From the NCBI GenBank assembly GCA_965655095.1, contig OZ296648.1:22940001-23004000 (forward strand): DNA of 64,000 nucleotides, in the 5' to 3' direction. A model generated the notes under the pieces. That model made no database searches. It was not told the DNA's origin and saw only the letters and a program-made list of their open reading frames with translations. Below, piece by piece: positions 1 through 64,000 of the stretch (position 1 is its first letter; each line of letters starts with the position of its first letter). The DNA comes from Haplodiscus bocki. Lineage: Eukaryota. The position numbers and the translations under genes were made by a program.

Positions 1-650
1 TGTGATTTTTTGCTGGACGCATACGGTAGGTTCAAAAATTTGAGAATATTGAGCTCAGAAACTTGTGTTGCGGTTAAGCAAGCACTTCAACATGCATCAA
101 TTGTACGACACTGCAAACAAATGAAAATGGCTGATATGACCTCTAGCAGTCACACTTCCAACCTTTGACATCGTTGTCAACTGGTTTCGCGATGAAAGTT
201 GGAGAGTTAGAAGTGTGGTTCTTCGACAAACACCTCCCCGAGCGCGTGAGTAAGCAGACGCATGAAGCAGTAGTTGAAATGAAACGAACTGAACTAATGG
301 GAAACAGCCTACTTGTAAAGAAAATTCATAAACGGTATTTAATGTTTTTTGCTCTGAAAAGTGCTTTCAACAGGCTGCTAAATTATTTTTCATTTATAGA
401 TGAAGCTATGATTGATTAACACGGTCACTATGCAAAACACTATGTTTGGGAAAGGGGCTACAAAAACCGAGAATGATACCATACGATGAATCTTCCCAAA
501 TGCCTGCCCGAAACTGTGGTAGACCACAACCACTTTGCAGCACTCGACGCTACAACCAAATATGTCTGCCACCAGTTACTTTCTCATGCAACCAAAAGAA
601 TTAACCAAGGACAAGAAGTTTTCCTTGAGTACGGCAGCGAAATCTGGAAG
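1..650 (+). pseudogene. Partial divergent B-type monomer (pre-SET/SET N-terminus plus NHS-deleted SET C-terminus)
   Basis: ORF 165-419 VVEMKRTELMGNSLLVKK matches B. ORF 486-668 LDATTKYVCHQLLSHATK...QEVFLEYGSEIW matches the A-type deleted core. Confidence 0.8.
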
Positions 651-789
651 GTTAGTTCATACGCTTAGTTCACAAATGTCATACGCTTAGCATAGCCAAA
701 AAATACGTAGCACCAAAACTCTGGCAAAAGCCATTGAATTTTGGAGCCATGCATTTTTTTCAGTCTCCTCATACGCAAGCTAAAAAATT

Positions 790-872
790 TCTATACGCTT
801 CGAATTCAATTTTTATACGCTTAGATTCCAATTCCATACGCTTAGCCTCAAATTGCATACGTTTAGCCTCAA
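790..872 (+). repeat. CATACGCTTAG-core minisatellite, 21-22-bp period (representative A linker copy)
   Basis: tatacgcttcgaattcaatttt / tatacgcttagattccaattc / catacgcttagcctcaaattg / catacgtttagcctc. Confidence 0.9.
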
Positions 873-1400
873 CCAATCCGAACTTTTTCAGATTGACTGG
901 ATTTGCAATTATGAAGCGAAACTCTAAAGCTTCTATTCAACGTCAAGAGAGACAGGCAGCTCTCGATGCCAAGAGGCTGAGGCAAGATGCAAGCGATGAA
1001 AGTGTGAGTACAAGGGCGGATGGAAACGCTGAGAGCTGATGAATTGAAAAATCGCATTATTGAGGATGAGGTATTCTTGAGCAAACAAAATGGGTGGAGT
1101 CGTCTTACACTGGTTGACAAATTTTTGACATCACCAACAAGACCCCAGCGAATCCCACTGTACTTGGTTTTTGACATCAAATCAAGCCGTAAGAAAACTG
1201 CTAGGGCACCCATTGGCAGAGTCAAAGGAATGCCGGTAGCGCAGCAAGTGGTACCGATAACTCAGTTTATCAAGTCGAGTGTTTACCAAGTTCCTCTAAC
1301 CATACAGTCAACATCTAAACTCCCCCTGGAATATTTTTCTCAGAGTCGCCGTCACTGGTGATGGATGGCCAGCGGTTCACATCGGCACATTTTGAGGAAG

Positions 1401-1459
1401 GTTAGCCTAATTCAAAAATCTCAAGCTTAGTTGAAAATGCTCCAACACAAATTCTTCAG
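1401..1459 (+). other. Putative 59-nt spliceosomal intron of the A monomer (representative copy)
   Basis: GAGGAAG|GTTAGC...ATTCTTCAG|GTCTCGACATC. Removal gives E-E-G-L-D-I-S-V just upstream of MGNGLNAKKSFRK, comparable to SETD8 EEGMKIDLIDGKGRG. Confidence 0.6.
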
Positions 1460-1937
1460 GTCTCGACATCTCAGTTGCTCGCGTGTTCGCAACTAATGGG
1501 AAACGGCCTAAATGCAAAGAAGAGCTTCAGAAAAATTAAGTACTGTTTTTTTGATCTGATAAGTGCTTTCAACAGGCTGCTAAATTAACTTTCATTTATA
1601 GATGAATCAATGATTGACTAACACGGTCACTATGCAAAACACCATGTTTGAGAAAGGGGACACAAAAACCAACAAACAGACCAACCGATGACTCTTCCCA
1701 AAGGCCTGCCCGGCACAGTGGTAGAGGACAACCACTTTGCAGCAGTCGACGCCACGTCCAAATATGTCTGCCACGTTATTCCCCGTTGGCAGATACATCA
1801 ATCACAACAGCCAGCTTAACTTTATACACGTAGCATACCGGACACCAGTTGGGTTTGACCTCATTGTCTTTCATGCAACCAAGAGAAATAACCACGGACA
1901 AGAACTTTTCTTTGAATACGGCAGCGAGTTTTGGAAT

Positions 1938-2818
1938 GTTAGTTCATACGTTTACTTCAAAAATCTCATACGCTCAGCATACCCAAAAAAGCTTAGCACC
2001 AAGACTCAATGGCAGACACTATTGAGTTTAAGCGTTTGCTGATTTTTTCACTCTCAAACAATCAGCCAAAAAGTTTCCATACGCTTCGACTTCAACTTCA
2101 TACGCTCAGCCTTATATTGCATACACTTAGGTTTTTCGCTGGACGCATACGGTTAGTTCAAGAAACTTATACGCTTACTTGTTCCAGAGAAGTGAGCAAT
2201 TATGAGAATAATGAGCTCCAGAAACATGTTCTGCGGTTAAGCAAGCGTTTCAATCTGCATCAATCGTAGGACACCGACAAACGATTGAAATTGGCTGATA
2301 GGACATCTAGCAATCTCACTTCCAACCTTTGACACCGTTGTCAACTGGTTTCGCGATGAAAGTTGGGAGTTAGAAGCGCGTTTCTTCGACAAAAGCCTTT
2401 CCCAACCGCGTGAGCAAGAAGATGCATGATGCACTAGTTGAAAGAAAACGAACAGAACTAAAGGGAAACAGCCTATTTTCGAAGAAGAGTTTTAGAAAGG
2501 GTAATTACTGTTTTTTTTTGCTCTGATAATTGCTTTCAACAGGCTGCTAAATTAACTTTCATTTATAGATGAAGCAATGATTGACTAACACGGTCACTGT
2601 GCAAAAACCATGTATGGGAAAGGGGCCAAAAAAGCCGAGAAACAGACCATACGATGAAGCTTCCCAAATGGCTGCCCGGCACTGTGGTAGACCACAACCA
2701 CTTTGAAGCACTCGACGCTACAACCAAATATGTCTGCCACCAGTTACTTTCTCATGCAACCAAAAGAATTAACCAAGGACAAGAACTTTTCCTTGAGTAT
2801 GGCAATGAATTCTGGAAG
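1938..2818 (+). pseudogene. Most divergent B-like monomer; keeps candidate splice sites lost elsewhere, but has the NHS deletion
   Basis: Acceptor TTGTTCCAG ends at 2187. Frameshifted exon reads EVSNYENNELQKHVLRLSKRF...LPTFDTVVNWFRDESWELEARFFDK...KRTELKGNSLFSKKSFRK. Donor G|GTAATT at 2501. Confidence 0.75.
2501..2568 (+). other. Putative 68-nt phase-1 intron splitting the SET domain
   Basis: AGAAAGG|GTAATT...TTTCATTTATAG|ATGAAGCAATGATTGACTAACACGGT splices to R-K-D-E-A-M-I-D-*-H-G, aligning with SETD8 RGDFVVEYHG. Confidence 0.7.
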
Positions 2819-5800
2819 GTTAGTTCATACGCTTAGTTCAAGAATGTCATACGCTTAGCATAGCCAAAAAATACGTAGCACCAAAACTCTGGCTAAAGCA
2901 ATTGAATTTTGGAGCCATGCATTTTTTTCAGTCTCCTCATACGCAAGCTAAAAAAGTTCTATACGCTTCGAATGCAATTTTCATACGCTTAGATTCCAAT
3001 TCCATACGCTTAGCCTCAAATTGCATACGTTTAGCCTCAACCAATCCGAGCGTTTTCAGATTGACTGGATTTGCAATTATGAAGCGAAACTCTAAAGCTT
3101 CTATTCAACGTCAAGAGAGACAGGCAGCTCTCGATGCCAAGAGGCTGAGGCAAGATGCAAGCGATGAAAGTGTGAGTACAAGGGCGGATGGAAACGCTGA
3201 GAGCTTATGAATTGAAAAATCGCATTATTGAGGATGAGGTATTCTTGAGCAAACAAAATTGGTGGAGTCGTCTTACACTGGTTGACAAATTTTTGACATC
3301 ACCAACAAGACCCCAGCGAATCCCACTGTACTTGGTTTTTGACATCAAATCAAGCCGGAAGAAAACTGCTAGGGCACCAGGGCACCCATTGGCACAGTCA
3401 AAGGAATGGCGGTAGCGCAGCAAGTGGTACCGATAACTCAGTTTATCAAGTCGAGTATTTACCAAGTTCCTCTAACCATACAGTCAACATCTAAACTCCC
3501 CCTGGAATATTTTTTTCAGAGTCGCCGTCACTGGTGATGGATGGCCAGCGGTTCACATCGGCACATTTTGAGGAAGGTTAGCATAATTCAAAAATCTCAT
3601 AAGCTTAGTTGAAAATGCTCCAACAAAAATTTTTCAGGTCTCGATATCTCAGTTGCTCGCTTGTTCGCAACTAATGGGAAACGGCCTAAATGCAAAGAAG
3701 AGCTTCAGAAAATATAAGTGCTGTTTTTTTGCTCTGATAAGTGCTTTCAACAGGCTGCTAAATTACCTTTCATTTATAGATGAAGCAATGATTGACTAAC
3801 ACGGTCACTATGCAAAACACCATGTTTGAGAAAGGGGCCACAAAAACCAACAAGCAGACCATACGATGAAGCTTCCCAAATGCCTGCCCGGCACTGTGGT
3901 AGACCACAACCACTTTGCAGCACTCGACGCTACAACCAAATATGTCTGCCACCAGTTACTTTCTCATGCAACCAAAAGAATTACCCAAGGAAAAGACCTT
4001 TTCCTTGAGTACGGCAGCGAATTCTGGAAGGTTAGTTCATACGCTTAGTTCAAGAATGTCATACGCTTAGCATAGCCAAAAAATACGTAACACCAAAACT
4101 CTGGCTAAAGCCATTGAATTTTGGAGCCATGCATTTTTTTCAGTCTCCTCATACGCAAGCTAAAAAATTTCTATACGCTTCGAATTCAATTTTTATACGC
4201 TTAGATTCCAATTCCATACGCTTAGCCTCAAATTGCATACATTTAGCCTCAACCAATCCAAACTTTTTCAGATTGACTGGATTTGCAATTATGAAGCGAA
4301 ACTCTAAAGCTTCTATTCAACTTCAAGAGAGACAGGCAGCTCTCGATGCCAAGAGGCTGAGGCAAGATGCAAGCGATGAAAGTGTGAGTACAAGGGCGGA
4401 TGGAAACGCTGAGAGCTGATGAATTGAAAAATCGCATTACTGAGGATGAGGTATTCTTGAGCAAACAAAATGGGTGGAGTCGTCTTACACTGGTTGACAA
4501 CTTTTTGACATCACCAACAAGACCCCAGCGAATCCCACTGTACTTGGTTTTTGACATCAAATCAAGCCGGAAGAAAACTGCTAGGGCACCAGGGCACCCA
4601 TTGGCACAGTCAAAGGAATGGCGGTAGCGCAGCAAGTGGTACCGATAACTCAGTTTATCAAGTCGAGTATTTACCAAGTTCCTCTAACCATACAGTCAAC
4701 ATCTAAACTCCCCCTGGAATATTTTTTTCAGAGTCGCCGTCACTGGTGATGGATGGCCAGCGGTTCACATCGGCACATTTTGAGGAAGGTTAGCATAATT
4801 CAAAAATCTCATAAGCTTAGTTGAAAATGCTCCAACAAAAATTTTTCAGGTCTCGATATCTCAGTTGCTCGCTTGTTCGCAACTAATGGGAAACGGCCTA
4901 AAAGCAAAGAAGAGCTTCAGAAAATATAAGTGCTGTTTTTTTGCTCTGATAAGTGCTTTCAACAGGCTGCTAAATTACCTTTCATTTATAGATGAAGCAA
5001 TGATTGACTAACACGGTCACTATGCAAAACACCATGTTTGAGAAAGGGGCCACAAAAACCAACAAGCAGACCATACGATGAAGCTTCCCAAATGCCTGCC
5101 CGGCACTGTGGTAGACCACAACCACTTTGCAGCACTCGACGCTACAACCAAATATGTCTGCCACCAGTTACTTTCTCATGCAACCAAAAGAATTACCCAA
5201 GGAAAAGACCTTTTCCTTGAGTACGGCAGCGAATTCTGGAAGGTTAGTTCATACGCTTAGTTCAAGAATGTCATACGCTTAGCATAGCCAAAAAATACGT
5301 AACACCAAAACTCTGGCTAAAGCCATTGAATTTTGGAGCCATGCATTTTTTTCAGTCTCCTCATACGCAAGCTAAAAAATTTCTATACGCTTCGAATTCA
5401 ATTTTTATACGCTTAGATTCCAATTCCATACGCTTAGCCTCAAATTGCATACATTTAGCCTCAACCAATCCAAACTTTTTCAGATTGACTGGATTTGCAA
5501 TTATGAAGCGAAACTCTAAAGCTTCTATTCAACTTCAAGAGAGACAGGCAGCTCTCGATGCCAAGAGGCTGAGGCAAGATGCAAGCGATGAAAGTGTGAG
5601 TACAAGGGCGGATGGAAACGCTGAGAGCTGATGAATTGAAAAATCGCATTACTGAGGATGAGGTATTCTTGAGCAAACAAAATGGGTGGAGTCGTCTTAC
5701 ACTGGTTGACAACTTTTTGACATCACCAACAAGACCCCAGCGAATCCCACTGTACTTGGTTTTTGACATCAAATCAAGCCGGAAGAAAACTGCTAGGGCA

Positions 5801-8800
5801 CCAGGGCACCCATTGGCACAGTCAAAGGAATGGCGGTAGCGCAGCAAGTGGTACCGATAACTCAGTTTATCAAGTCGAGTATTTACCAAGTTCCTCTAAC
5901 CATACAGTCAACATCTAAACTCCCCCTGGAATATTTTTTTCAGAGTCGCCGTCACTGGTGATGGATGGCCAGCGGTTCACATCGGCACATTTTGAGGAAG
6001 GTTAGCCTAATTCAAAAATCTCAAATCTTAGTTGAAAATGCTCCCACACAAATTTTTCAGGTCTCGACATCTCAGTTGCTCGCTTGTTCACAACTAATGG
6101 GAAACGGCCTAAATGCAAAGAAGAGCTTCAGAAAAATTAAGTACTGTTTTTTTGATCTGATAAGTGCTTTCAACAGGCTGCTAAATTACCTTTTATTTAT
6201 AGATGAAGCAATGATTGACTAACACGGTCACTATGCAAAACACCATGTTTGAGAAAGGGGCCACAAAAACCAACAAACAGACCATCCGATCACTCTTCCC
6301 AAAGGCCTGCCCGGCAAAGTGGTAGAGGACAACCACTTTGCAGCAGTCGACGCCACGTCCAAATATGTCTGCCACCAGTTACTTTCTCATTCAACCAGAA
6401 GAATTAACCAAGGACAAGAACTTTTCCTTGAGTATGGCAGCGAATTCTGGAAGGTTAGTTCATACGCTTAGTTCACAAATGTAATACGCTTAGCATAGCC
6501 AAAAAAAAGTAGCACCAAAACTCTGGCTAAAGCCATTGCATCTTGGAGCCATGCATTTTTTTCAGTCTCCTCATACGCAAGCTAAAAAATTTCTATACGC
6601 TTCGAATTCAATTTTTATACGCTTAGATTCCAATTCCATACGCTTAGCCTCAAATTGCATACATTTAGCCTCAACCAATCCAAACTTTTTCAGATTGACT
6701 GGATTTGCAATTATGAAGCGAAACTCTAAAGCTTCTATTCAACTTCAAGAGAGACAGGCAGCTCTCGATGCCAAGAGGCTGAGGCAAGATGCAAGCGATG
6801 AAAGTGTGAGTACAAGGGCGGATGGAAACGCTGAGAGCTGATGAATTGAAAAATCGCATTACTGAGGATGAGGTATTCTTGAGCAAACAAAATGGGTGGA
6901 GTCGTCTTACACTGGTTGACAACTTTTTGACATCACCAACAAGACCCCAGCGAATCCCACTGTACTTGGTTTTTGACATCAAATCAAGCCGGAAGAAAAC
7001 TGCTAGGGCACCAGGGCACCCATTGGCACAGTCAAAGGAATGGCGGTAGCGCAGCAAGTGGTACCGATAACTCAGTTTATCAAGTCGAGTATTTACCAAG
7101 TTCCTCTAACCATACAGTCAACATCTAAACTCCCCCTGGAATATTTTTTTCAGAGTCGCCGTCACTGGTGATGGATGGCCAGCGGTTCACATCGGCACAT
7201 TTTGAGGAAGGTTAGCCTAATTCAAAAATCTCAAATCTTAGTTGAAAATGCTCCCACACAAATTTTTCAGGTCTCGACATCTCAGTTGCTCGCTTGTTCA
7301 CAACTAATGGGAAACGGCCTAAATGCAAAGAAGAGCTTCAGAAAAATTAAGTACTGTTTTTTTGATCTGATAAGTGCTTTCAACAGGCTGCTAAATTACC
7401 TTTTATTTATAGATGAAGCAATGATTGACTAACACGGTCACTATGCAAAACACCATGTTTGAGAAAGGGGCCACAAAAACCAACAAACAGACCATCCGAT
7501 CACTCTTCCCAAAGGCCTGCCCGGCAAAGTGGTAGAGGACAACCACTTTGCAGCAGTCGACGCCACGTCCAAATATGTCTGCCACCAGTTACTTTCTCAT
7601 TCAACCAGAAGAATTAACCAAGGACAAGAACTTTTCCTTGAGTATGGCAGCGAATTCTGGAAGGTTAGTTCATACGCTTAGTTCACAAATGTAATACGCT
7701 TAGCATAGCCAAAAAAAAGTAGCACCAAAACTCTGGCTAAAGCCATTGCATCTTGGAGCCATGCATTTTTTTCAGTCTCCTCATACGCAAGCTAAAAAAC
7801 TTCTATACGCTTCGAATGCAATTTTCATACGCTTAGATTCCAATTCCATACGCTTAGCCTCAAATTGCATACGTTTAGCCTCAACCAATCCGAGCGTTTT
7901 CAGATTGACTGGATTTGCAATTATGAAGCGAAACTCTAAAGCTTCTATTCAACGTCAAGAGAGACAGGCAGCTCTCGATGCCAAGAGGCTGAGGCAAGAT
8001 GCAAGCGATGAAAGTGTGAGTACAAGGGCGGATGGAAACGCTGACAGCTGATGAATTGAAAAATCGCATTATTGAGGATGAGGTATTCTTGAGCAAACAA
8101 AATGGGTGGAGTCGTCTTACACTGGTTGACAAAATTTTGACATCACCAACAAGACCCCAGCGAATCCCACTGTACTTGGTTTTTGACATCAAATCAAGCC
8201 GGAAGAAAACTGCTAGGGCACCAGGGCACCCATTGGCACAGTCAAAGGAATGGCGGTAGCGCAGCAAGTGGTACCGATAACTCAGTTTATCAAGTCGAGT
8301 ATTTACCAAGTTCCTCTAACCATACAGTCAACATCTAAACTCCCCCTGGAATATTTTTTTCAGAGTCGCCGTCACTGGTGATGGATGGCCAGCGGTTCAC
8401 ATCGGCTCATTTTGAGGAAGGTTAGCCTAATTCAAAAATCTCATAAGCTTAGTTGAAAAAGCTCCAACACAAATTTTTCAGGTCTCGACATCTCAGTTGC
8501 TCGCTTGTTCGCAACTAATGGGAAACGGCCTAAATGCAAAGAAGAGCTTCAGAAAATATAAGTACTGTTTTTTTGCTCTGATAAGTGCTTTCAACAGGCT
8601 GCTAAATTAACTTTCATTTATAGATGAAGCAATGATTGACTAACACGGTCACTATGCAAAACACCATGTTTGAGAAAGGGGCCACAAAAACCAAAAAACA
8701 GACCATACGATGAAGCTTCCCAAATGCCTGCCCGGCACTGTGGTAGACCACAATCACTTTGCAGCACTCGACGCTACAACCAAACATGTCTGCCACCAGT

Positions 8801-8915
8801 TACTTTCTCATTCAACCAAAAGAATTAACCAAGAACTTTTCCTTCAGTACGGCAGCGAATTCTGGAAGGTTAGTTCATACGCTTAGTTCACAAATGTCAT
8901 ACGCTTAGCATAGCC

Positions 8916-8977
8916 AAAAAATACGTAGCACCAAAACTCTGGCTAAAGCCATTGAATTTTGGAGCCATGCATTTTTT
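8916..8977. repeat. Imperfect palindrome in the A linker (representative copy; present in each A monomer)
   Basis: AAAAAATACGTAGCACCAAAACTC vs reverse complement of GAATTTTGGAGCCATGCATTTTTT: 19/24 match, around an inner TGGCT-AA-AGCCA stem. Confidence 0.8.
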
Positions 8978-52479: not shown

Positions 52480-53661
52480 GTTAGTTCATACGCTTAGTTC
52501 AAGAATGTCATACGCTTAGCATAGCCAAAAAATACGTAACACCAAAACTCTGGCTAAAGCCATTGAATTTTGGAGCCATGCATTTTTTTCAGTCTCCTCA
52601 TACGCAAGCTAAAAAATTTCTATACGTTTCGAATTCAATTTTCATACGCTTAGATTCCAATTCCATACGCTTAGCCTCAAATTGCATACGTTTAGCCTCA
52701 ACTAATCCGAACTTTTTCAGATTGACTGGATTTGCAATTATGAAGCGAAACTCTAAAGCTTCTATTCAACGTCAAGAGAGACAGGCAGCTCTCGATGCCA
52801 AGAGGCTGAGGCAAGATGCAAGCGATGAAAGTGTGAGTACAAGGGCGGATGGAAACGCTGAGAGCTGATGAATTGAAAAATCGCATTATTGAGGATGAGG
52901 TATTCTTGAGCAAACAAAATGGGTGGAGTCGTCTTACACTGGTTGACAAATTTTTGACATCACCAACAAGACCCCAGCGAATCCCACTGTACTTGGTTTT
53001 TGACATCAAATCAAGCCGTAAGAAAACTGCTAGGGCACCCATTGGCACAGTCAAACGAATGGCGGTAGCGCAGCAAGTGGTACCCATAACTCAGTTTATC
53101 AAGTCGAGTGTTTACCAAGTTCCTCTAACCAGACAGTCAACATCTAAACTCCCCCTGGAATATTTTTTCAAGAGTCGCCGTCACTGGTGATGGATGGCCA
53201 GCGGTTCACATCGGCATATTTTGAGGAAGGTTAGCCTAATTCAAAAATCTCAAGCTGAGTTGAAAATGCTCCAACACAATATCTTCAGGTCTCGACATCT
53301 CAGTTGCTCGCTTGTTCGCAACTAATGGGAAACGGCCTAAATGCAAAGAAGAGCTTCAGAAAAATTAGGTAGTTTTTTTGATCTGATAAGTGCTTTCAAC
53401 AGGCTGCTAAATTAACTTTCATTTATAGATGAAGCAATGATTGACTAACACGGTCACTATGCAAAACACCATGTTTGAGAAAGGGGCCACAAAAACCAAC
53501 AAACAGACCATCCGATGACTCTTCCCAAAGGTTTGCCCGGCAAAGTGGTAGAGGACAACGCCACGTCCAAATATGTCAGCCACCAGTTACTTTCTCATTC
53601 AACCAAAAGAATTAACCAAGGACAAGAACTTTTCCTTGAGTATGGCAGCGAATTCTGGAAG

Positions 53662-55265
53662 GTAAGTTCATACGCTTAGTTCACAAATGTCATACGCTTA
53701 GCATAGCCAAAAAATACGTAGCACCAAAACTCTGGCTAAAGCCATTGAATTTTGGAGCCATGCATTTTTTTCAGTCTCCTCATACGCAAGCTAAAAAATT
53801 TCTATACGTTTCGAATTCAATTTTCATACGCTTAGATTCCAATTCCATACGCTTAGCGTCAAATTGCATACGTTTAGCCTCAACTAATCCGAACTTTTTC
53901 AGATTGACTGGATTTGCAATTATGAAGCGAAACTCTAAAGCTTCTATTCAACGTCAGAGACAGGCAGCTCTCGATGCCAAGAGGCTGAGAAAAGATGCAG
54001 AAGATGCAAGTGATGAAAATGTGAGTACAAGGGCGAAGGGAAGGCCCCTCCGAAAGTTGATGAACTGAGAAAACGAATATTGAGGACGAGTTAATCTTGA
54101 ACCATCGAAATGGGTGGAGTCGTCATACACTAGTTGACAACTTTTTTACGCCACCCAACAAGTCCCACGCTAGCTCCAAAAGACTCGGTTTTTCACATCA
54201 ACCCAAGCCAGAAGCGAAAACTGCTAGAAGCACCAATTGGAACGGTCAAACGGCTGGGGGAGAGCAGCAAGTGGTAACGATACCTCCGTTTATCACGAAG
54301 AGTGTTTACCAAGTTCCTCAAACCAAACAGTCAATATCGAAGCTCCCCCTGGAAAATTTTTTTTTCAAAGTCCTCGTCACTGATGATGGATGGCCAGCGG
54401 TTACGTCGGCACACATGGAGGAAGGTAAGCTTAGCTCAACAACCTCAAACGCTCAGTTCGAAAATCTCATACGCTGAGTTCAAAAATATCATACTCTTAG
54501 TTCAAAAATCTCATACGCTTAGTTCAAAAATCTCCTACGCGCAGCATACCCAAAAACGCTTAGCACCAAAACTCATTGGTTAATGACACAAGCTTCGGTT
54601 TCAATTTCATACGCTTAGCCTCAAATTGTATACTCTGATTTTTTGCTGGACGCAAACGGTAGGTTCAAAAATTTGAGAATAATGAGCTCAGAAACATGTG
54701 TTGCGGTTAAGCAAGCACTTCAACCTGCATCAATTGTACGACACTGCAAACAAATGAAAAAGGCTGATAAGACCTCTAGCAGTCCCACTTCCAACCTTTG
54801 ACACCGTTGTCAACTGGTTTCGCGATGAAATTTGGAGAGTTAGAAGTGTGTTTCTTCGACAAAAACCTCCCCGAGCGCGTGAGTAAGCAGACGCATGGAG
54901 CAGTAGTTGAAATGAAACGAACAGAACTAATGGGAAACTGCCTATTTGCAGAGAAGAGTTTAAGAAAGGTTAATTACTGTTTTTTTTGCTCTGATAAGTG
55001 CTTTCAAGCTGCTAAAGTAACTTTCATTTATAGAAGAAGCTATGATTGACTAACACGGTCACTGTGCAAAAACTATGTTTGGGAAAGGGGCCAAAGAAGC
55101 CGAGAAACAGACCATCCGATGACTCTTCCCAAAGGTTTGCCCGGCAAAGTGGTAGAGGACAACGCCACGTCCAAATATGTCAGCCACCAGTTACTTTCTC
55201 ATTCAACCAAAAGAATTAACCAAGGACAAGAACTTTTCTTTGAGTATGGCAGCGAATTCTGGAAG
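53662..55265 (+). repeat. Class C composite monomer 3 (copy of monomer 1)
   Basis: ORFs 53745, 54097, 54302 and 54798 are identical in translation to 46223, 46575, 46780 and 47276. Confidence 0.9.
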
Positions 55266-56707
55266 GTAAGTTCATACGCTTAGTTCACAAATGTCATACG
55301 CTTAGCATAGCCAAAAAATACGTAGCACCAAAACTCTGGCTAAAGCCATTGAATTTTGGAGCCATGCATTTTTTTAAGTCTCCTCATACGCAAGCTAAAA
55401 AATTTCTACACGTTTCGAATTCAATTTTCATACGCTTAGATTCCAATTCCATACGCTTAGCCTCAAATTGCATACGTTTAGCCTCAACTAATCCGAACTT
55501 TTTCAGATTGACTGGATTTGCAATTATGAAGCGAAACTCTAAAGCTTCTATTCAACGTCAAGAGAGACAGGCAGCTCTCGATGCCAAGAGGCTGAGGCAA
55601 GATGCAAGCGATGAAAGTGTGAGTACAAGGGCGGATGGAAACGCTGAGAGCTGATGAATTGAAAAATCGCATTATTGAGGATGAGGTACTCTTGAGCAAA
55701 CAAAATGGGTGGAGTCGTCTTACACTGGTTGACAAATTTTTGACATCACCAACAAGACCCCAGCGAATCCCACTGTACTTGGTTTTTGACATCAAATCAA
55801 GCCGTAAGAAAACTGCTAGGGCACCCATTGGCACAGTCAAACGAATGGCGGTAGCGCAGCAAGTGGTACCCATAACTCAGTTTATCAAGTCGAGTGTTTA
55901 CCAAGTTCCTCTAACCAGACAGTCAACATCTAAACTCCCCCTGGAATATTTTTTCAAGAGTCGCCGTCACTGGTGATGGATGGCCAGCGGTTCACATCGG
56001 CATATTTTGAGGAAGGTTAGCCTAATTCAAAAATCTCAAGCTGAGTTGAAAATGCTCCAACACAATATCTTCAGGTCTCGACATCTCAGTTGCTCGCTTG
56101 TTCGCAACTAATGGGAAACGGCCTAAATGCAAAGAAGAGCTTCAGAAAAATTAGGTAGTTTTTTTGATCTGATAAGTGCTTTCAACAGGCTGCTAAATTA
56201 ACTTTCATTTATAGATGAAGCAATGATTGACTAACACGGTCACTATGCAAAACACCATGTTTGAGAAAGGGGCCACAAAAACCAACAAACAGACCATCCG
56301 ATGACTCTTCCCAAAGGTTTGCCCGGCAAAGTGGTAGAGGACAACGCCACGTCCAAATATGTCAGCCACCAGTTACTTTCTCATTCAACCAAAAGAATTA
56401 ACCAAGGACAAGAACTTTTCCTTGAGTATGGCAGCGAATTCTGGAAGGTAAGTTCATACGCTTAGTTCACAAATGTCATACGCTTAGCATAGCCAAAAAA
56501 TACGTAGCACCAAAACTCTGGCTAAAGCCATTGAATTTTGGAGCCATGCATTTTTTTCAGTCTCCTCATACGCAAGCTAAAAAATTTCTATACGTTTCGA
56601 ATTCAATTTTCATACGCTTAGATTCCAATTCCATACGCTTAGCGTCAAATTGCATACGTTTAGCCTCAACTAATCCGAACTTTTTCAGATTGACTGGATT
56701 TGCAATT

Positions 56708-58155
56708 ATGAAGCGAAACTCTAAAGCTTCTATTCAACGTCAGAGACAGGCAGCTCTCGATGCCAAGAGGCTGAGAAAAGATGCAGAAGATGCAAGTGAT
56801 GAAAATGTGAGTACAAGGGCGAAGGGAAGGCCCCTCCGAAAGTTGATGAACTGAGAAAACGAATATTGAGGACGAGTTAATCTTGAACCATCGAAATGGG
56901 TGGAGTCGTCATACACTAGTTGACAACTTTTTTACGCCACCCAACAAGTCCCACGCTAGCTCCAAAAGACTCGGTTTTTCACATCAACCCAAGCCAGAAG
57001 CGAAAACTGCTAGAAGCACCAATTGGAACGGTCAAACGGCTGGGGGAGAGCAGCAAGTGGTAACGATACCTCCGTTTATCACGAAGAGTGTTTACCAAGT
57101 TCCTCAAACCAAACAGTCAATATCGAAGCTCCCCCTGGAAAATTTTTTTTTCAAAGTCCTCGTCACTGATGATGGATGGCCAGCGGTTACGTCGGCACAC
57201 ATGGAGGAAGGTAAGCTTAGCTCAACAACCTCAAACGCTCAGTTCGAAAATCTCATACGCTGAGTTCAAAAATATCATACTCTTAGTTCAAAAATCTCAT
57301 ACGCTTAGTTCAAAAATCTCCTACGCGCAGCATACCCAAAAACGCTTAGCACCAAAACTCATTGGTTAATGCCACAAGCTTCGGTTTCAATTTCATACGC
57401 TTAGCCTCAAATTGTATACTCTGATTTTTTGCTGGACGCAAACGGTAGGTTCAAAAATTTGAGAATAATGAGCTCAGAAACATGTGTTGCGGTTAAGCAA
57501 GCACTTCAACCTGCATCAATTGTACGACACTGCAAACAAATGAAAAAGGCTGATAAGACCTCTAGCAGTCCCACTTCCAACCTTTGACACCGTTGTCAAC
57601 TGGTTTCGCGATGAAATTTGGAGAGTTAGAAGTGTGTTTCTTCGACAAAAACCTCCCCGAGCGCGTGAGTAAGCAGACGCATGGAGCAGTAGTTGAAATG
57701 AAACGAACAGAACTAATGGGAAACTGCCTATTTGCAGAGAAGAGTTTAAGAAAGGTTAATTACTGTTTTTTTTGCTCTGATAAGTGCTTTCAAGCTGCTA
57801 AAGTAACTTTCATTTATAGAAGAAGCTATGATTGACTAACACGGTCACTGTGCAAAAACTATGTTTGGGAAAGGGGCCAAAGAAGCCGAGAAACAGACCA
57901 TCCGATGACTCTTCCCAAAGGCCTGCCCGGGGCCGTGGTAGAGGGCAACCACTTCGCATCAGTCGACGCCACGTCCAAATGTGTCTGCCATCAGTTACTC
58001 CCCTTGGCAGATACATCAATCACAGCAGCCAGCCTAACTTAATACACGTAGCTTACCACACAGAAGCTGGGTTTGACTTCACTGCCTTTCATGCAACCAA
58101 GAGAAATAACCACGGACAAGAACTTTTCTTTGCATACGGCAGCGAGTTTTGGAAA
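56708..58155 (+). pseudogene. Second copy of the longest SET pseudogene (C monomer 4, 56448-58155)
   Basis: Same translations as 49009-50651, offset by 7522. Confidence 0.8.
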
Positions 58156-61100
58156 GTTAGTTCATACGTTTAGTTCAAAAATCTCATACGCTTAGCATAC
58201 CCAAAAAATGCTTAGCACCAAAACTCAATGGCAGACACTATCGAGTTTACGCGCTAGGTGTTTTTTCCACTCGCAAACGCTTACCCAAAAAGTTTCCACA
58301 CGCGTCGGTTGCAACTTCATACGCTTAGCCTCAAATTGCATACTCTGAATTTTTGCTGGACGCATACGGTAGGTTCAAAAATGTGAGAATATTGAGCTCA
58401 GAAACTTGTGTTGCGGTTGAGCAAGCACTTCAACCTGCATCAATTGTATGACACTGCAAACAATTGAAAATGGCTGATACAACCTCTAGCAGTCACACTT
58501 CCAACCTTTGACATCGTTGTCAACTGGTTTCGCGATGAAAGTTGGAGAGTTAGAAGTGTGTTTCTTCGACAAAAACCTCCCCGAGCGCGTGAGTAAGCAG
58601 ACGCATGAAGCAGTAGTTGAAATGAAACGAACAGAACTAATGGGAAACTTCCTATTTGCAGAGAAGAGTTTAAGAAAGGTTAATTACGGTTTTTTTTTGT
58701 TCTGATAAGTGCTTTCAAGCTGCTAAAGTAACTTTCATTTATAGAAGAAGCTATGATTGACTAACACGGTCACTGTGCAAAAACTATGTTTGGGAAAGGG
58801 GCCAAAGAAGCCGAGAAACAGACCATCCGATGACTCTTCCCAAAGGCCTGCCCGGGACCGTGGTAGAGGGCAACCACTTCGCATCAGTCGACGCCACGTC
58901 CAAATGTGTCTGCCATCAGTTACTCCCCTTGGCAGATACATCAATCACAGCAGCCAGCCTAACTTAATACACGTAGCTTACCACACAGAAGCTGGGTTTG
59001 ACTTCACTGCCTTTCATGCAACCAAGAGAAATAACCACGGACAAGAACTTTTCTTTGAATACGGCAGCGAGTTTTGGAATGTTAGTTCATACGTTTAGTT
59101 CAAAAATTTCATACGCTTAGCATACCCAAAAAATGCTTAGCACCAAAACTCAATGGCAGACACTATGGAGTTTAAGCGCTAGGTGTTTTTTCCACTCGCA
59201 AACGCTTACCCAAAAAGTTTCCACACGCGTCGGTTGCAACTTCATACGCTTAGCCTCAAATTGCATACTCTGAATTTTTGCTGGACGCATACGGTAGGTT
59301 CGAAAATTTGAGAATATTGAGCTCAGAAACTTGTCTTGCGGTTGAGCAAGCACTTCAACCTGCATCAATTGTACGACACTGCAAACAATTGAAAATGGCT
59401 GATACGACCTCTAGCAGTCACACTTCCAACCTTTGACATCGTTGTCAACTGGTTTCGCGATGAAAGTTGGAGAGTTAGAAGTGTGGTTCTTCGACAAAAA
59501 CCTCACCGAGCGCGTGAGTAAGCAGACCCATGGAGCAGTAGTTGAAATGAAACGAACAGAACTAATGGGAAACTGCCTCTTTGCAGAGAAGAGTTTAAGA
59601 AAGGTTAATTACGGTTTTTTTGCTCTGATAAGTGCTTTCAAGCTGCTAAAGTAACTTTCATTTATAGAAGAAGCTATGATTGACTAACACGGTCACTGTG
59701 CAAAAACTATGTTTGGGAAAGGGGCCAAAGAAGCCGAGAAACAGACCATCCGATGACTCTTCCCAAAGGCCTACCCGGGACCGTGGTAGAGGGCAACCAC
59801 TTCGCATCAGTCGACGCCACGTCCAAATGTGTCTGCCATCAGTTACTCCCCTTGGCAGATACATCAATCACAGCAGCCAGCCTAACTTAATACACGTAGC
59901 TTACCACACAGAAGCTGGGTTTTGACTTCACTGCCTTTCATGCAACCAAGAGAAATAACCACGGACAAGAACTTTTCTTTGAATACGGCAGCGAGTTTTG
60001 GAATGTTAGTTCATACGTTTAGTTCAAAAATTTCATACGCTTAGCATACCCAAAAAATGCTTAGCACCAAAACTCAATGGCAGACACTATCGAGTTTAAG
60101 CGCTAGGTGTTTTTTCCACTCGCAAACGCTTACCCAAAAAGTTTCCACACGCGTCGGTTGCAACTTCATACGCTTAGCCTCAAATTGCATACTCTGATTT
60201 TTTGCTGGACGCATACGGTAGGTTCAAAAATTTGAGAATATTGAGCTCAGAAACTTGTGTTGCGGTTAAGCAAGCACTCCAACCTGCATCAATTGTACGA
60301 CACTGCAAACAATTGAAAATGGCTGATACGACCTCTAGCAGTCACACTTCCAACCTTTGACATCGTTGTCAACTGGTTTCGCGATGAAAGTTGGAGAGTT
60401 AGAAGTGTGTTTCTTCGACAAAAACCTCCCCGAGCGCGTGAGTAAGCAGACGCATGAAGCAGTAGTTGAAATGAAACAAACAGATTTAATGGGAAACTGC
60501 CTATTTGCAGAGAAGAGTTTAAGAAAGGTAAATTACTGTTTTTTTTTGCTCTGATAAGTGCTTTCAAGCTGCTAAAGTAACTTTCATTTATAGAAGAAGC
60601 TATGATTGACTAACACGGTCACTGTGCAAAAACCATGTTTGGGAAAGGGGCCACAGAAGCCGAGAAACAGACCATCCGATGACTCTTCCCAAAGGCCTGC
60701 CCGGGACCGTGGTAGAGGGCAACCACTTCGCATCAGTCGACGCCACGTCCAAATGTGTCTGCCATCAGTTACTCCCCTTGGCAGATACATCAATCACAGC
60801 AGCCAGCCTAACTTATTACACGTAGCTTACCACACAGAAGCTGGGTTTGACTTCACTGCCTTTCATGCAACCAAGAGAAATAACCACGGACAAGAACTTT
60901 TCTTTGCATACGGCAGCGAGTTTTGGAATGTTAGTTCATACGTTAAGTTCAAAATCTCATACGCTTAGCATACCCAAAAAATGCTTAGCACCAAAACTCA
61001 ATGGCAGACACTATCGAGTTTACGCGCTAGGTGTTTTTTCCACTCGCAAACGCTTACCCAAAAAGTTTCCACACGCGTCGGTTGCAACTTCATACGCTTA

Positions 61101-62822
61101 GCCTCAAATTGCATACTCTGATTTTTTGCTGGACGCATACGGTAGGTTCAAAAATTTGAGAAGATTGAGCTCAGAAACTTGTGTTGCGGTTAAGCAAGCA
61201 CTCCAACCTGCATCAATTGTACGACACTGCAAACAATTGAAAATGGCTGATACGACCTCTAGCAGTCACACTTCCAACCTTTGACATCGTTGTCAACTGG
61301 TTTCGCGATGAAAGTTGGAGAGTTAGAAGTGTGTTTCTTCGACAAAAACCTCCCCGAGCGCGTGAGTAAGCAGACGCATGAAGCAGTAGTTGAAATGAAA
61401 CGAACAGATTTAATGGGAAACTGCCTATTTGCAGAGAAGAGTTTAAGAAAAGTAAATTACTGTTTTTTTTGCTCTGATAAGTGCTTTAAAGCTGCTAAAG
61501 TAACTTTCATTTATAGAAGAAGCTATGATTGACTAACACGGTCACTGTGCAAAAACCATGTTTGGGAAAGGGGCCACAGAAGCCGAGAAACAGACCATCC
61601 GATGACTCTTCCCAAAGGCCTGCCCGGGACCGTGGTAGAGGGCAACCACTTCGCATCAGTCGACGCCACGTCCAAATGTGTCTTCCATCAGTTACTCCCC
61701 TTGGCAGATACATCAATCACAGCAGCCAGCCTAACTTAATACACGTAGCTTACCACACAGAAGCTGGGTTTGACTTCACTGCCTTTCATGCAACCAAGAG
61801 AAATAACCACGGACAAGAACTTTTCTTTGCATACGGCAGCGAGTTTTGGAATGTTAGTTCATACGTTTAGTTCAAAAATTTCATACGCTTAGCATACCCA
61901 AAAAATGCTTAGCACCAAAACTCAATGGCAGACACTATGGAGTTTAAGCGCTAGGTGTTTTTTCCACTCGCAAACGCTTACCCAAAAAGTTTCCACACGC
62001 GTCGGTTGCAACTTCATACGCTTAGCCTCAAATTGCATACTCTGAATTTTTGCTGGACGCATACGGTAGGTTCGAAAATTTGAGAATATTGAGCTCAGAA
62101 ACTTGTGTTGCGGTTGAGCAAGCACTTCAACCTGCATCAATTGTACGACACTGCAAACAATTGAAAATGGCTGATACGACCTCTAGCAGTCACACTTCCA
62201 ACCTTTGACATCGTTGTCAACTGGTTTCGCGATGAAAGTTGGAGAGTTAGAAGTGTGGTTCTTCGACAAAAACCTCACCGAGCGCGTGAGTAAGCAGACC
62301 CATGGAGCAGTAGTTGAAATGAAACGAACAGAACTAATGGGAAACTGCCTCTTTGCAGAGAAGAGTTTAAGAAAGGTTAATTACGGTTTTTTTGCTCTGA
62401 TAAGTGCTTTCAAGCTGCTAAAGTAACTTTCATTTATAGAAGAAGCTATGATTGACTAACACGGTCACTGTGCAAAAACTATGTTTGGGAAAGGGGCCAA
62501 AGAAGCCGAGAAACAGACCATCCGATGACTCTTCCCAAAGGCCTACCCGGGACCGTGGTAGAGGGCAACCACTTCGCATCAGTCGACGCCACGTCCAAAT
62601 GTGTCTGCCATCAGTTACTCCCCTTGGCAGATACATCAATCACAGCAGCCAGCCTAACTTAATACACGTAGCTTACCACACAGAAGCTGGGTTTGACTTC
62701 ACTGCCTTTCATGCAACCAAGAGAAATAACCACGGACAAGAACTTTTCTTTGAATACGGCAGCGAGTTTTGGAATGTTAGTTCATACGTTTAGTTCAAAA
62801 ATTTCATACGCTTAGCATACCC

Positions 62823-62886
62823 AAAAAATGCTTAGCACCAAAACTCAATGGCAGACACTATCGAGTTTAAGCGCTAGGTGTTTTTT
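62823..62886. repeat. Imperfect palindrome in the B linker (representative copy)
   Basis: AAAAAATGCTTAGCACCAAAACTCAATGG vs reverse complement of CTATCGAGTTTAAGCGCTAGGTGTTTTTT: 21/29 match; 7 of the 8 mismatches are transitions. Confidence 0.7.
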
Positions 62887-63226
62887 CCACTCGCAAACGC
62901 TTACCCAAAAAGTTTCCACACGCGTCGGTTGCAACTTCATACGCTTAGCCTCAAATTGCATACTCTGAATTTTTGCTGGACGCATACGGTAGGTTCGAAA
63001 ATTTGAGAATATTGAGCTCAGAAACTTGTGTTGCGGTTGAGCAAGCACTTCAACCTGCATCAATTGTACGACACTGCAAACAATTGAAAATGGCTGATAC
63101 GACCTCTAGCAGTCACACTTCCAACCTTTGACATCGTTGTCAACTGGTTTCGCGATGAAATTTGGAGAGTTAGAAGTGTGGTTCTTCGACAAAAACCTCA
63201 CCGAGCGCGTGAGTAAGCAGACGCAT

Positions 63227-63699
63227 GAAGCAGTAGTTGAAATGAAACGAACAGAACTAATGGGAAACTGCCTATTTGCAGAGAAGAGTTTTAGAAAGGT
63301 TAATTACGGTTTTTTTTGCCCTGATAAGTGCTTTCAAGCTGCTAAAGTAACTTTCATTTATAGAAGAAGCTATGATTGACTAACACGGTCACTGTGCAAA
63401 AACTATGTTTGGGAAAGGGGCCAAGGAAGCCGAGAAACAGACCATCCGATGACTCTTCCAAAAGGCCTGCCCGGGACCGTGGTAGAGGGCAACCACTTCG
63501 CATCAGTCGACGCCACGTCCAAATGTGTCTGCCATCAGTTACTCCCCTTGGCAGATACATCAATCACAGCAGCCAGCCTAACTTAATACACGTAGCTTAC
63601 CACACAGAAGCTGGGTTTGACTTCACTGCCTTTCATGCAACCAAGAGAAATAACCACGGACAAGAACTTTTCTTTGAATACGGCAGCGAGTTTTGGAAT
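63227..63699 (+). pseudogene. SET domain remnant (SET8/KMT5A-like), representative B copy with all motifs present but disrupted
   Basis: EAVVEMKRTELMGNCLFAEKSFRK, intron remnant, EAMID*HG, frameshift, FASVDATSKCVCHQ, frameshift, LGRYINHSSQPN...GQELFFEYGSEFW. Matches SET motifs GxG, YxG, RxINHS and ELxxDY. Confidence 0.88.
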
Positions 63700-64000
63700 G
63701 TTAGTTCATACGTTTAGTTCAAAAATTTCATACGCTTAGCATACCCAAAAAATGCTTAGCACCAAAACTCAATGTCAGACACTATGGAGTTTAAGCGCTA
63801 GGTGTTTTTTCCACTCGCAAACGCTTACCCAAAAAGTTTCCACACGCGTCGGTTGCAACTTAATACGCTTAGCCTCAAGCTTCATACTCTGATTTTTTGC
63901 TGGACGCATACGGTAGGTTCAAAAATTTGAGAATATTGAGCTCAGAAACTTGTGTTGCGGTTAAGCAAGCACTTCAAAATGCACCAATTGTACGGCACTG

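What the first reader, a model, noticed from the sequence alone, without database searches (positions are those of the whole stretch)
1..64000. A >=64-kb macrosatellite built from a dead SET-domain histone methyltransferase gene
Seen: all ~55 monomers carry ordered SET motif remnants separated by intron-like segments. Known: GxG, YxG, RxINHS and ELxxDY define SET domains. EEG before the domain, YHG and VDAT...LGRxINHS are SETD8/PR-Set7 (H4K20me1)-like. Inference: a chromatin-modifier pseudogene has become a satellite. By analogy to Su(Ste)/Stellate or D4Z4, it might yield small RNAs against a live paralog, or act as a structural chromatin domain. No function is shown by the sequence.
Basis: partly seen in the sequence, partly recalled or inferred. 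Interest (0 to 1): 0.85.

Follow-up and report, generated by a model that had tools for sequence, protein, structure and literature searches.

The report
Tandem array of dead SET-gene copies
The whole window is part of a 92-kb head-to-tail array of about 80 broken copies of a SET-domain (lysine-methyltransferase-like) gene; one intact relative survives elsewhere in the genome, and nothing shows that the array does anything.

Summary
The window is one uninterrupted + strand tandem array of 54 units. With its flanks it spans about 92.5 kb and 80 units (C1:22.938-23.031 Mb). The units are copies of a spliced four-exon gene, with introns kept.

An intact paralog lies on unplaced contig C604: 516+ aa, GT-AG introns, complete SET domain, about 80% nucleotide identity to the array.

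Every unit is dead. All 80 have a stop where the paralog has the Tyr codon of DYHG. Each other exon remnant carries a frameshift or stop fixed in all units that hold it. Differences between units fall evenly on the three codon positions.

There are three unit classes:
- A, about 1.2 kb, lacks the GRYINHS segment.
- B is about 0.92 kb.
- C, 1.6 kb, is an A x B recombinant joined in a family-specific 22-bp minisatellite.

No RNA data exist, so the small-RNA idea is untested. The array has one orientation only and shares at most 38 exact bases with the paralog's coding sequence.

The scan noted a similar SET-derived dead satellite elsewhere in this genome before (s1-359280).

Verdict: a new member of a known kind, most likely neutral.

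The parts
1..64000 (+). Part of a ~92.5-kb head-to-tail array (whole array about window -2092 to +90574 = C1:22,937,909-23,030,574); 54 units here, 80 in all
2569..45906 (+). Nearly pure run of 36 class A units (1182-1213 bp): exon-4 remnant with 87-bp deletion, spacer, exon-1 remnant, short intron, exon-2 stub fused to exon-3 tail, intron. Neighbour identity is 98.5% and falls to 95.7% at lag 30; dimeric higher-order stretches lie around 14643-24299
15853..17062 (+). Reference class A unit. Exon-4 remnant 15853-16102 (lacks the GRYINHS segment); exon-1 remnant 16364-16861; exon-2 stub 16921-16951 joined directly to exon-3 tail 16957-16996
15870..15872 (+). TAA where the intact paralog has TAC (Tyr of DYHG). 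The same position is a stop in 54/54 window units and 80/80 array units
58747..59669 (+). Reference class B unit (923 bp). Full-length exon-4 remnant 58747-59080 (stop at 58762-58764; 1-bp deletions at exon positions 39 and 186); spacer; exon-3 remnant 59310-59602
58916..59065 (+). Stretch whose translation matches Pfam SET PF00856 positions 62-105 (27 bits, above the cut-off); holds GRYINHS and ELFFEYG
56215..57821 (+). Reference class C unit (1607 bp): left part like class A (exon 4 with deletion, exon 1), right part like class B (full exon 3)
57215..57330 (+). 22-bp minisatellite (5.3 copies, GCTCAGTTCAAAAATCTCATAC) at the A/B joint of the class C unit. Also at 46907-47022, 49693-49808 and 54429-54544
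1602..2568 (+). Divergent 967-bp B-like unit (B'). It has the TGA of class A and one frameshift of class B, and sits basal in the exon-4 tree; similar units lie at the right end of the array
45907..59669 (+). Two copies of a 7.5-kb higher-order block (C-A-C-B-B-...), offset 7522 bp, 99.4% identical over 6.2 kb
52146..53428 (+). Single recombinant unit: full-length exon 4 of class B followed by the exon 1 / stub part of class A

Best explanation
This is a decaying macrosatellite made of tandem copies of a whole, intron-bearing pseudogene, and it most likely has no function.

Shown:
- The source is a member of a small lineage-specific gene family: exon 1, a middle exon 2 that may be cupin-like, and a SET domain split over exons 3 and 4. 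One intact member survives on contig C604.
- The leftmost unit of the array still carries homology to the 5' flank of that gene.
- All units share a nonsense codon at the Tyr of the DYHG motif, plus fixed frameshifts in the remnants of exons 1 and 3.

Inferred order of events:
1. A dispersed duplicate of the gene was inactivated.
2. The dead gene plus its spacer was duplicated in tandem.
3. Two deletion derivatives arose. Class A lost most of exons 2-3 and 87 bp of exon 4. Class B lost exons 1-2.
4. Blocks were amplified and locally homogenised by unequal crossing-over and gene conversion.
5. Class A and class B units recombined within the 22-bp minisatellite that builds this family's introns and spacers, giving class C and the larger 2.8-kb and 7.5-kb repeats.

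Since amplification the units have drifted without coding constraint.
For: Intact paralog: four in-frame exons with GT-AG introns. Its spliced SET domain scores 106 bits against a profile built without it.

Lesions: stop at exon-4 position 18 in 80/80 units. 1-bp deletion at exon-1 position 431 in 52/52 units. 2-bp deletion and a TAG in exon 3 in 36/36 units. No open frame longer than 144 aa in the window.

No coding constraint: variable sites are even over codon positions (chi-square p 0.66 for class A, 0.50 for class B). Diversity is similar in exon-derived and other columns.

Tandem-repeat dynamics: identity falls with distance (98.5% to 95.7%), and some stretches are 100% identical at lag 2. 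A 7.5-kb block is repeated at 99.4%.

Phylogeny: the array units lie on one side of a 100/97 branch from C604. The 87-bp deletion defines one clade, A plus C (100/99).

Recombination: the class C joint lies in the 22-bp minisatellite. That motif is confined to this family.

Founder copy: the left edge is homologous to the 5' flank of the C604 gene.

Reality of the array: contigs from four runs of two samples cover it at high depth, over introns and exons alike, with no splice joints.
Against: Neutrality is inferred from sequence only. No RNA, small-RNA or chromatin data exist for this organism in the tools, so a non-coding role cannot be excluded.

The exon-1-derived part of class A has the lowest diversity (pi 0.008-0.025, against 0.03-0.12 elsewhere). 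Exon-derived columns are slightly less diverse than the rest in class A (0.033 against 0.040, p 0.005). I cannot explain this. It could reflect a non-coding constraint or uneven homogenisation.

The shared stop could in principle have spread by gene conversion after amplification rather than before it.
Confidence: 0.75

Rival explanations
1. Su(Ste)-like regulator: the array is transcribed and processed into small RNAs (piRNA or siRNA) that silence the intact paralog on C604 or other family members.
For: A live-looking homologous target exists. The array and the target's coding sequence share exact runs of up to 38 nt, and 66 of 1528 21-mers. Class A and C units keep the region upstream of exon 1. 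In Drosophila, Su(Ste) repeats silence the homologous Stellate genes through antisense piRNAs (PMC2691822).
Against: All 80 units face the same way and the window shares no 20-mer with its reverse complement, so there is no built-in source of double-stranded or antisense RNA. Identity to the target is only about 80%. No RNA run is on record. Units drift like neutral DNA.
Confidence: 0.08
2. Structural chromatin element: the array acts as a heterochromatin block, boundary or anchor (as DXZ4 or D4Z4 do), or as (peri)centromeric DNA, independent of its coding origin.
For: Size (92 kb), regular 0.9-1.6-kb units and higher-order repeats are typical of macrosatellites. High copy depth in two samples.
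Against: There is a single array at 22.9 Mb of a 198-Mb contig and no other copies of this satellite in the genome. No conserved short motif stood out. CpG is not depleted and CpG sites are no more variable than other sites, so there is no sign of heavy germline methylation. No chromatin data.
Confidence: 0.07
3. Still-coding multicopy gene family, read with another genetic code, programmed frameshifting or unusual splicing.
For: Splice-site positions are conserved with the intact paralog. Some open frames of 113-144 aa recur in many units.
Against: All three stop codons occur in frame (TAA, TGA, TAG). There are -1, -2 and -5 frameshifts in every exon remnant. Class A lacks the cofactor-binding NHS segment. 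There is no third-position excess of variation. The intact paralog in the same genome uses the standard code.
Confidence: 0.02
4. Assembly artefact: a few copies were inflated into a long array by the assembler.
For: Long near-identical repeats are hard to assemble. The only second assembly found (L069) comes from the same genome at 99.995% identity and is not independent.
Against: Units differ by 1-5% in an ordered, distance-dependent pattern, with several structural classes. Short-read contigs of four runs from two samples match at word depths of about 30-800.
Confidence: 0.03

Closest known systems
Gene-bearing macrosatellites (for example human D4Z4 with DUX4; reviewed in PMC12376486)
   Same: Kilobase-sized unit derived from a protein-coding gene, repeated head to tail over tens of kilobases, with higher-order structure and local homogenisation.
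   Different: D4Z4 units are copies of an intronless retrogene and keep an open reading frame. Here the units keep introns, so they are genomic rather than retro copies. All are broken, and three deletion or recombinant classes coexist.
Drosophila Suppressor of Stellate / Stellate (PMC2691822, PMC7874207)
   Same: Tandem repeats homologous to a protein-coding gene family in the same genome. The repeats need not code to act.
   Different: Su(Ste) gives antisense piRNAs. Here no RNA data exist, orientation is uniform, identity to the intact paralog is about 80%, and the source is a SET-domain gene. Function is unproven.
Satellite DNA evolving by unequal crossing-over and concerted evolution (review PMC5615363)
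   Same: Identity falls with distance. There are higher-order repeats, subfamilies and block amplification.
   Different: The unit is much longer than in classical satellites, and its origin from a spliced gene can still be read exon by exon.
KMT5A/SETD8 (PR-Set7) SET domains
   Same: The family profile's best solved match is KMT5A (72 bits). It shares DYHG and GR-INHS motifs and a SET domain at the C-terminal end, with no recognisable pre-SET region.
   Different: The parent has an added N-terminal exon and a middle exon that may be cupin-like. Its exon 4 alone matches EHMT1 better. It is not an orthologue, and its substrate is unknown.
Second SET-family satellite in the same genome (C5:88.91-88.96 Mb; probably earlier finding s1-359280)
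   Same: Tandem array of broken pieces of a gene with the same middle-exon-plus-SET build.
   Different: Period about 788 bp. Copies are only 62-79% alike, so it is older. It is only about 35% identical in protein to the C604 gene.

Membership tests
SET domain (Pfam PF00856) | Profile match above the curated cut-off | tested here: met
   Class B open frame 27.0 bits against a cut-off of 22.4. Paralog exon 4 scores 42 bits. Class A pieces give no hit on their own.
SET domain (Pfam PF00856) | Ordered GxG, YxG, NHS and ELxxDY-type motifs | tested here: inconclusive
   All four are present in the intact paralog. In the array, the Y of YxG is a stop in all units, and NHS is kept in only 11 of 54 window units.
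Functional SET methyltransferase gene | Open spliced reading frame | tested here: not met
   0 of 80 units. There are fixed stops and frameshifts in the remnants of exons 1, 3 and 4.
KMT5A/SETD8 (PR-Set7) subfamily | Closest solved relatives are KMT5A | tested here: inconclusive
   The family profile ranks KMT5A first (5e-19, against 5e-13 for KMT2A). The single sequence ranks EHMT1 first (4e-7) and KMT5A at E 0.15.
KMT5A/SETD8 (PR-Set7) subfamily | Orthology and H4K20 monomethylation activity | not testable with these tools
   The parent has extra exons 1 and 2 that SETD8 lacks. There is no biochemical evidence.
Macrosatellite | Unit of about 1 kb or more, repeated head to tail over tens of kilobases | tested here: met
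   80 units of 0.92-1.65 kb over about 92.5 kb.
Macrosatellite | Copy-number polymorphism between individuals | not testable with these tools
   Only contigs of two samples were available, and depth is not a copy number.
Su(Ste)-like small-RNA source | Homologous intact target gene in the genome | tested here: met
   C604 gene, about 80% nucleotide identity, exact runs of up to 38 nt.
Su(Ste)-like small-RNA source | Antisense or small RNAs from the repeats | not testable with these tools
   No RNA run on record for the organism.
Su(Ste)-like small-RNA source | Inverted copies or another built-in antisense source | tested here: not met
   No 20-mer is shared with the reverse complement, and all units are on the + strand.
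D4Z4-type retrogene array | Intronless unit with an intact ORF | tested here: not met
   Units keep introns at the parent's positions and have no intact ORF.
JmjC/cupin domain (parent exon 2; absent from the array except a 31-nt stub) | Profile or fold match | tested here: inconclusive
   ESM features point to JmjC/Cupin_8 clusters at 0.92. Cupin hits in the PDB are weak (E 0.03). Pfam JmjC does not hit the locus. The AlphaFold model has pLDDT 55 and is unusable.

The most novel reading that the evidence does not exclude
The array is not inert. It would be one arm of a recurrent conflict or regulation system in which dead tandem copies of this SET gene family yield small RNAs that hold the surviving intact member in check, as Su(Ste) does for Stellate. 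That could explain why the same family gave rise to at least two separate satellites in one genome.
Probability: 0.07. Interest if true: 0.7.

Novelty: new member of a known kind. Interest (0 to 1): 0.33.

Why it matters
As it stands this is a clean, datable example of how a spliced gene turns into a satellite. The founder copy still has its 5' flank. The killing mutation is shared by all units. Two deletion derivatives and their recombinants can be traced, and the joints lie in an intron and spacer minisatellite. That is useful for repeat annotation, because these units should be masked as pseudogene satellite and not called as about 80 SET genes. It also illustrates how intronic minisatellites can drive exon loss and reshuffling. 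It would matter more if the array proved to regulate the intact paralog, which encodes a SET domain joined to a further, possibly cupin-like, domain.

Tried and rejected
- Pfam on class A pieces: no hits. Their SET origin rests on homology to class B and to the C604 gene.
- Search for an intact unit: none among 80.
- RNA evidence: two run searches found only four runs of one study, none on record as RNA. The laid contigs look like genomic DNA, with no splice joints. Expression is therefore untested, not absent.
- P0003, an 80-aa library protein that seemed to show an 'open' class A exon 4, is an ORF of this same array read with TGA as Trp. Its contig, L069, is the same genome at 99.995% identity.
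- Exon 2 of the parent as JmjC: Pfam JmjC does not hit the locus. Exon 1 gives nothing in the PDB or the Atlas. The AlphaFold2 model of exon 2 has pLDDT 55, so no fold search was run.
I used the 3-kb loci already held.
- Literature: three full-text searches found no description of a SET-gene-derived satellite. The organism's name is hidden, so a species-specific paper could exist.
- Limits of the tools: the spliced parent protein could not be sent to reference-only tools, so exons were searched apart and the spliced protein was analysed only in local scripts.
Full report
1. What is in the window

The 64,000 bases contain no N and share no 20-mers with their own reverse complement. The commonest spacings between repeated 20-mers are 1210, 1202, 1184, 2786, 1182, 1206 and 924 bp. 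BLAST of two reference units tiles the window completely, head to tail, on the + strand. Tandem Repeats Finder reports only an inner 21-22-bp minisatellite, because its longest period is 500 bp.

The window is G000:C1:22,940,001-23,004,000 of a 1.5-Gb eukaryotic assembly. With 20 kb of flank on the left and 40 kb on the right, the array runs from about window -2092 to +90574. That is about 92.5 kb, and the neighbouring DNA is unrelated. So '>=64 kb' is correct, and the array is bounded.

2. What the unit is

An unplaced 44.8-kb contig, C604, holds one related gene. Its four exons are L050:5365-5869, 6092-6479, 6673-6989 and 7058-7395. They have GT-AG borders and join in frame to 516 aa, with a short fifth exon adding 7 aa before the stop.

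- Exon 4 hits Pfam SET at 42 bits.
- The spliced protein matches a profile built only from other organisms' relatives over residues 389-513, across the exon 3/4 junction, at 106 bits. The motifs MGNGLFA, DYHG, VDATSKCVCH, GRYINHS and FFDYG are all present.

Mapping these exons on the array gives three unit classes and one single recombinant unit.

- Class A: 39 units in the window, 43 in all, 1.18-1.21 kb. It holds exon 4 with an 87-bp in-frame deletion, a spacer, exon 1, intron 1, and the first 31 nt of exon 2 fused directly to the last 40 nt of exon 3, followed by intron 3.
- Class B: 10 in the window, 28 in all, 0.92-0.97 kb. It holds full-length exon 4, a spacer and exon 3.
- Class C: 4 in the window, 7 in all, 1.6 kb. 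It holds exon 4 with the deletion, exon 1, a 22-bp minisatellite and exon 3.
- One unit (52146-53428) joins a class B exon 4 to the class A remainder.

The gene order e1-e2-e3-e4 read cyclically is what tandem duplication of a whole gene gives. The introns are kept, so these are genomic copies and not retrocopies.

The open frame of a class B unit passes the Pfam SET cut-off on its own (27.0 against 22.4 bits, E 6.3e-6). Class A pieces do not.

3. Are the units dead?

Yes, all of them.

- At exon-4 position 18 the intact gene has TAC (the Tyr of DYHG). All 80 units have a stop there: 78 TAA, 1 TGA, 1 TAG. In the window it is 54 of 54.
- Class A also has a TGA at position 48. The 87-bp deletion, shared by class C, removes the residues VGRYINHS...IIVF.
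- Class B has 1-bp deletions at positions 39 and 186.
- The exon-1 remnant has a 1-bp deletion at position 431 in 52 of 52 units, and 5-bp and 2-bp deletions in most.
- The exon-3 remnant has a 2-bp deletion and a TAG in 36 of 36 units.
- No stop-free frame in the window exceeds 144 aa.
- The GRYINH-coding 18-mer occurs 11 times in the window, with 0.03 expected by chance.

4. Constraint

Among class A units, variable sites number 57, 52 and 48 at codon positions 1, 2 and 3 (chi-square p 0.66). Among class B they number 59, 55 and 65 (p 0.50).

Diversity in exon-derived and other columns is similar. In class A it is 0.033 against 0.040, p 0.005. In class B it is 0.051 against 0.058, not significant.

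By contrast, differences between the C604 gene and the array consensus are enriched at third positions: exon 1 0.28 against 0.17-0.19 (p 0.027), and exon 4 0.27 against 0.11-0.13 (p 0.009). This fits purifying selection on at least the C604 lineage.

One oddity remains. The exon-1-derived part of class A has the lowest diversity, and I cannot explain it.

5. How the array grew

Neighbouring class A units are 98.5% identical, falling to 95.7% at 30 units apart. Some stretches are 100% identical at lag 2, which marks 2.4-kb dimers. A 7.5-kb block occurs twice at 99.4% identity.

In a maximum-likelihood tree of exon 4:
- C604 and a metagenome copy (L070) sit together on one side of a 100/97 branch.
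- Units with the 87-bp deletion (A plus C) form one clade (100/99).
- Main class B forms another clade (98/96).
- Four divergent B' units are basal and unresolved.

Class C equals class A positions 1-1084 followed by class B positions 511-923. The joint lies in a 5.3-copy 22-bp minisatellite. Class C exon 4 sequences fall inside two different class A subclades, so such recombinants arose more than once.

The 22-bp motif builds all introns and spacers of this family. Genome-wide it is found only in this array, in C604 and on C11 (96 matches, none for the reversed control). The class A joint, by contrast, is a plain exon-to-exon deletion.

The leftmost unit keeps about 500 bp of homology to the 5' flank of the C604 gene. 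I take it for the founder copy. The right end stops inside exon 4.

Divergences give the order of events:
- array against C604: about 18-20%;
- class A against class B: about 12-18%;
- within classes: 1-5%.

6. Is the array real?

Contigs of four public runs from two samples of one study match the stretch 55036-59669 at word depths of roughly 30-800. They cover introns and exons alike, and no joint removes an intron. This looks like high-copy genomic DNA.

The one other assembly found (L069) is the same genome at 99.995% identity and is not independent.

7. Which SET family?

- Exon 4 alone finds EHMT1/2 best in the PDB (4e-7), through the C-terminal 50 residues. KMT5A/SETD8 comes only at E 0.15.
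- Against 1.84 billion representative proteins, exon 4 gives only 31 hits at E <= 0.001. The full-length ones include fish proteins, one named 'set-1-like'.
- A profile of exon 4 with these relatives ranks KMT5A/SETD8 first (about 5e-19, 72 bits). KMT2A follows at 5e-13 and EHMT2 at 3e-12.

It is not shown for this sequence alone, and the parent is not a SETD8 orthologue because it has two further exons.

Exon 2 resembles JmjC/Cupin_8 fragments by language-model features (0.92, a lead only), and weakly resembles cupins in the PDB. Pfam JmjC does not hit the locus. The AlphaFold2 model was too poor to use. Only 31 nt of exon 2 survive in the array.

8. Function

Nothing in the sequence shows a function.

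For the Su(Ste)-like idea, the needed intact paralog exists. However:
- the array has one orientation only;
- identity to the paralog is about 80%;
- only 66 of 1528 21-mers of the paralog's coding sequence occur in the array, and the longest exact run is 38 nt;
- no RNA run is on record.

CpG observed/expected is 0.78 in the array, and CpG sites are no more variable than other sites. So there is no sign of heavy germline methylation.

I therefore rate 'neutral, decaying pseudogene macrosatellite' at about 0.75, a small-RNA source at about 0.08 and a structural chromatin role at about 0.07.

9. Context and novelty

- The family has other dead members. Dispersed copies lie on C11:32.9-34.4 Mb and at C1:127.3 Mb.
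- A second, older tandem array of about 788-bp units lies on C5:88.91-88.96 Mb.
- The scan had already described a dead SET-fragment satellite on another piece of this genome (s1-359280). It is probably the C5 array, but I could not verify that.
- Two notes on this window agree with what I found: s1-352220 (lesions fixed before amplification) and s1-352218 (linker module as recombination joint).
- Gene-derived macrosatellites and homologous repeat-gene pairs are known (D4Z4/DUX4, PMC12376486; Su(Ste)/Stellate, PMC2691822), as is satellite growth by unequal crossing-over (PMC5615363).
- I found no paper on a SET-gene-derived satellite.

Verdict: a new member of a known kind, of modest interest.

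Noticed in passing
L050:5365-7395 (G000:C604:33365-35395): The only intact family member found: four in-frame exons plus a short fifth, about 523 aa, with a complete SET domain across exons 3 and 4. Its middle exon resembles JmjC/cupin by language-model features only. A cupin-like plus SET build would be unusual.
   Followed up: partly
L049:1841-6454 (G000:C604:15841-20454): An intronless 1537-aa ORF about 13 kb upstream of the intact gene. It ends in a SET domain with the same DYHG / KC-CH / G-INH signature (29% identity, E 7e-11). Pfam recognises no other domain. It may be a mobile-element protein.
   Followed up: partly
L063:1-3195 and L062, L064 (G000:C5:88.91-88.96 Mb): A second, older tandem array (period about 788 bp, copies 62-79% alike) built from pieces of a distant member of the same middle-exon-plus-SET family. 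It is probably the satellite of earlier finding s1-359280.
   Followed up: partly
L058-L061 (G000:C11:32.9-34.4 Mb): Dispersed pseudogene copies of the family with stops. In L058 and L060 an exon 3/4 remnant lies just upstream of exons 1-2, so these are also adjacent duplicates.
   Followed up: no
L070:1-1455 (ENA metagenome scaffold): Another broken copy, 80-82% identical to both C604 and the array, in the order exon 3, exon 4, spacer, exon 2. It keeps the Tyr codon of DYHG but has other stops. Its source organism is unknown.
   Followed up: partly
window 789-872, 46907-47022 and every unit; L050 introns: All introns and spacers of this family are built from one 21-22-bp motif (GCTTAGTTCAAAAATCTCATAC). 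Most exons are followed by GTTAGTTCA. The motif occurs nowhere else in the genome except C604 and C11.
   Followed up: yes
window 16364-16861 and the same part of all class A units: The exon-1-derived segment is the least variable part of class A units (pi 0.008-0.025, against 0.03-0.12 elsewhere), although it is frameshifted in every unit. Unexplained.
   Followed up: partly
window 42359-42601 (L069:10001-10243): The public protein library holds an 80-aa 'protein' (P0003) that is an ORF of this array called with TGA read as Trp. Such calls could inflate SET-gene counts.
   Followed up: yes
window 1-64000 and flanks L043-L048: CpG observed/expected is 0.78 in the array and 0.95 in the AT-rich flanks (33-37% GC). 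CpG sites are no more variable than other sites, which suggests little germline CpG methylation here.
   Followed up: partly
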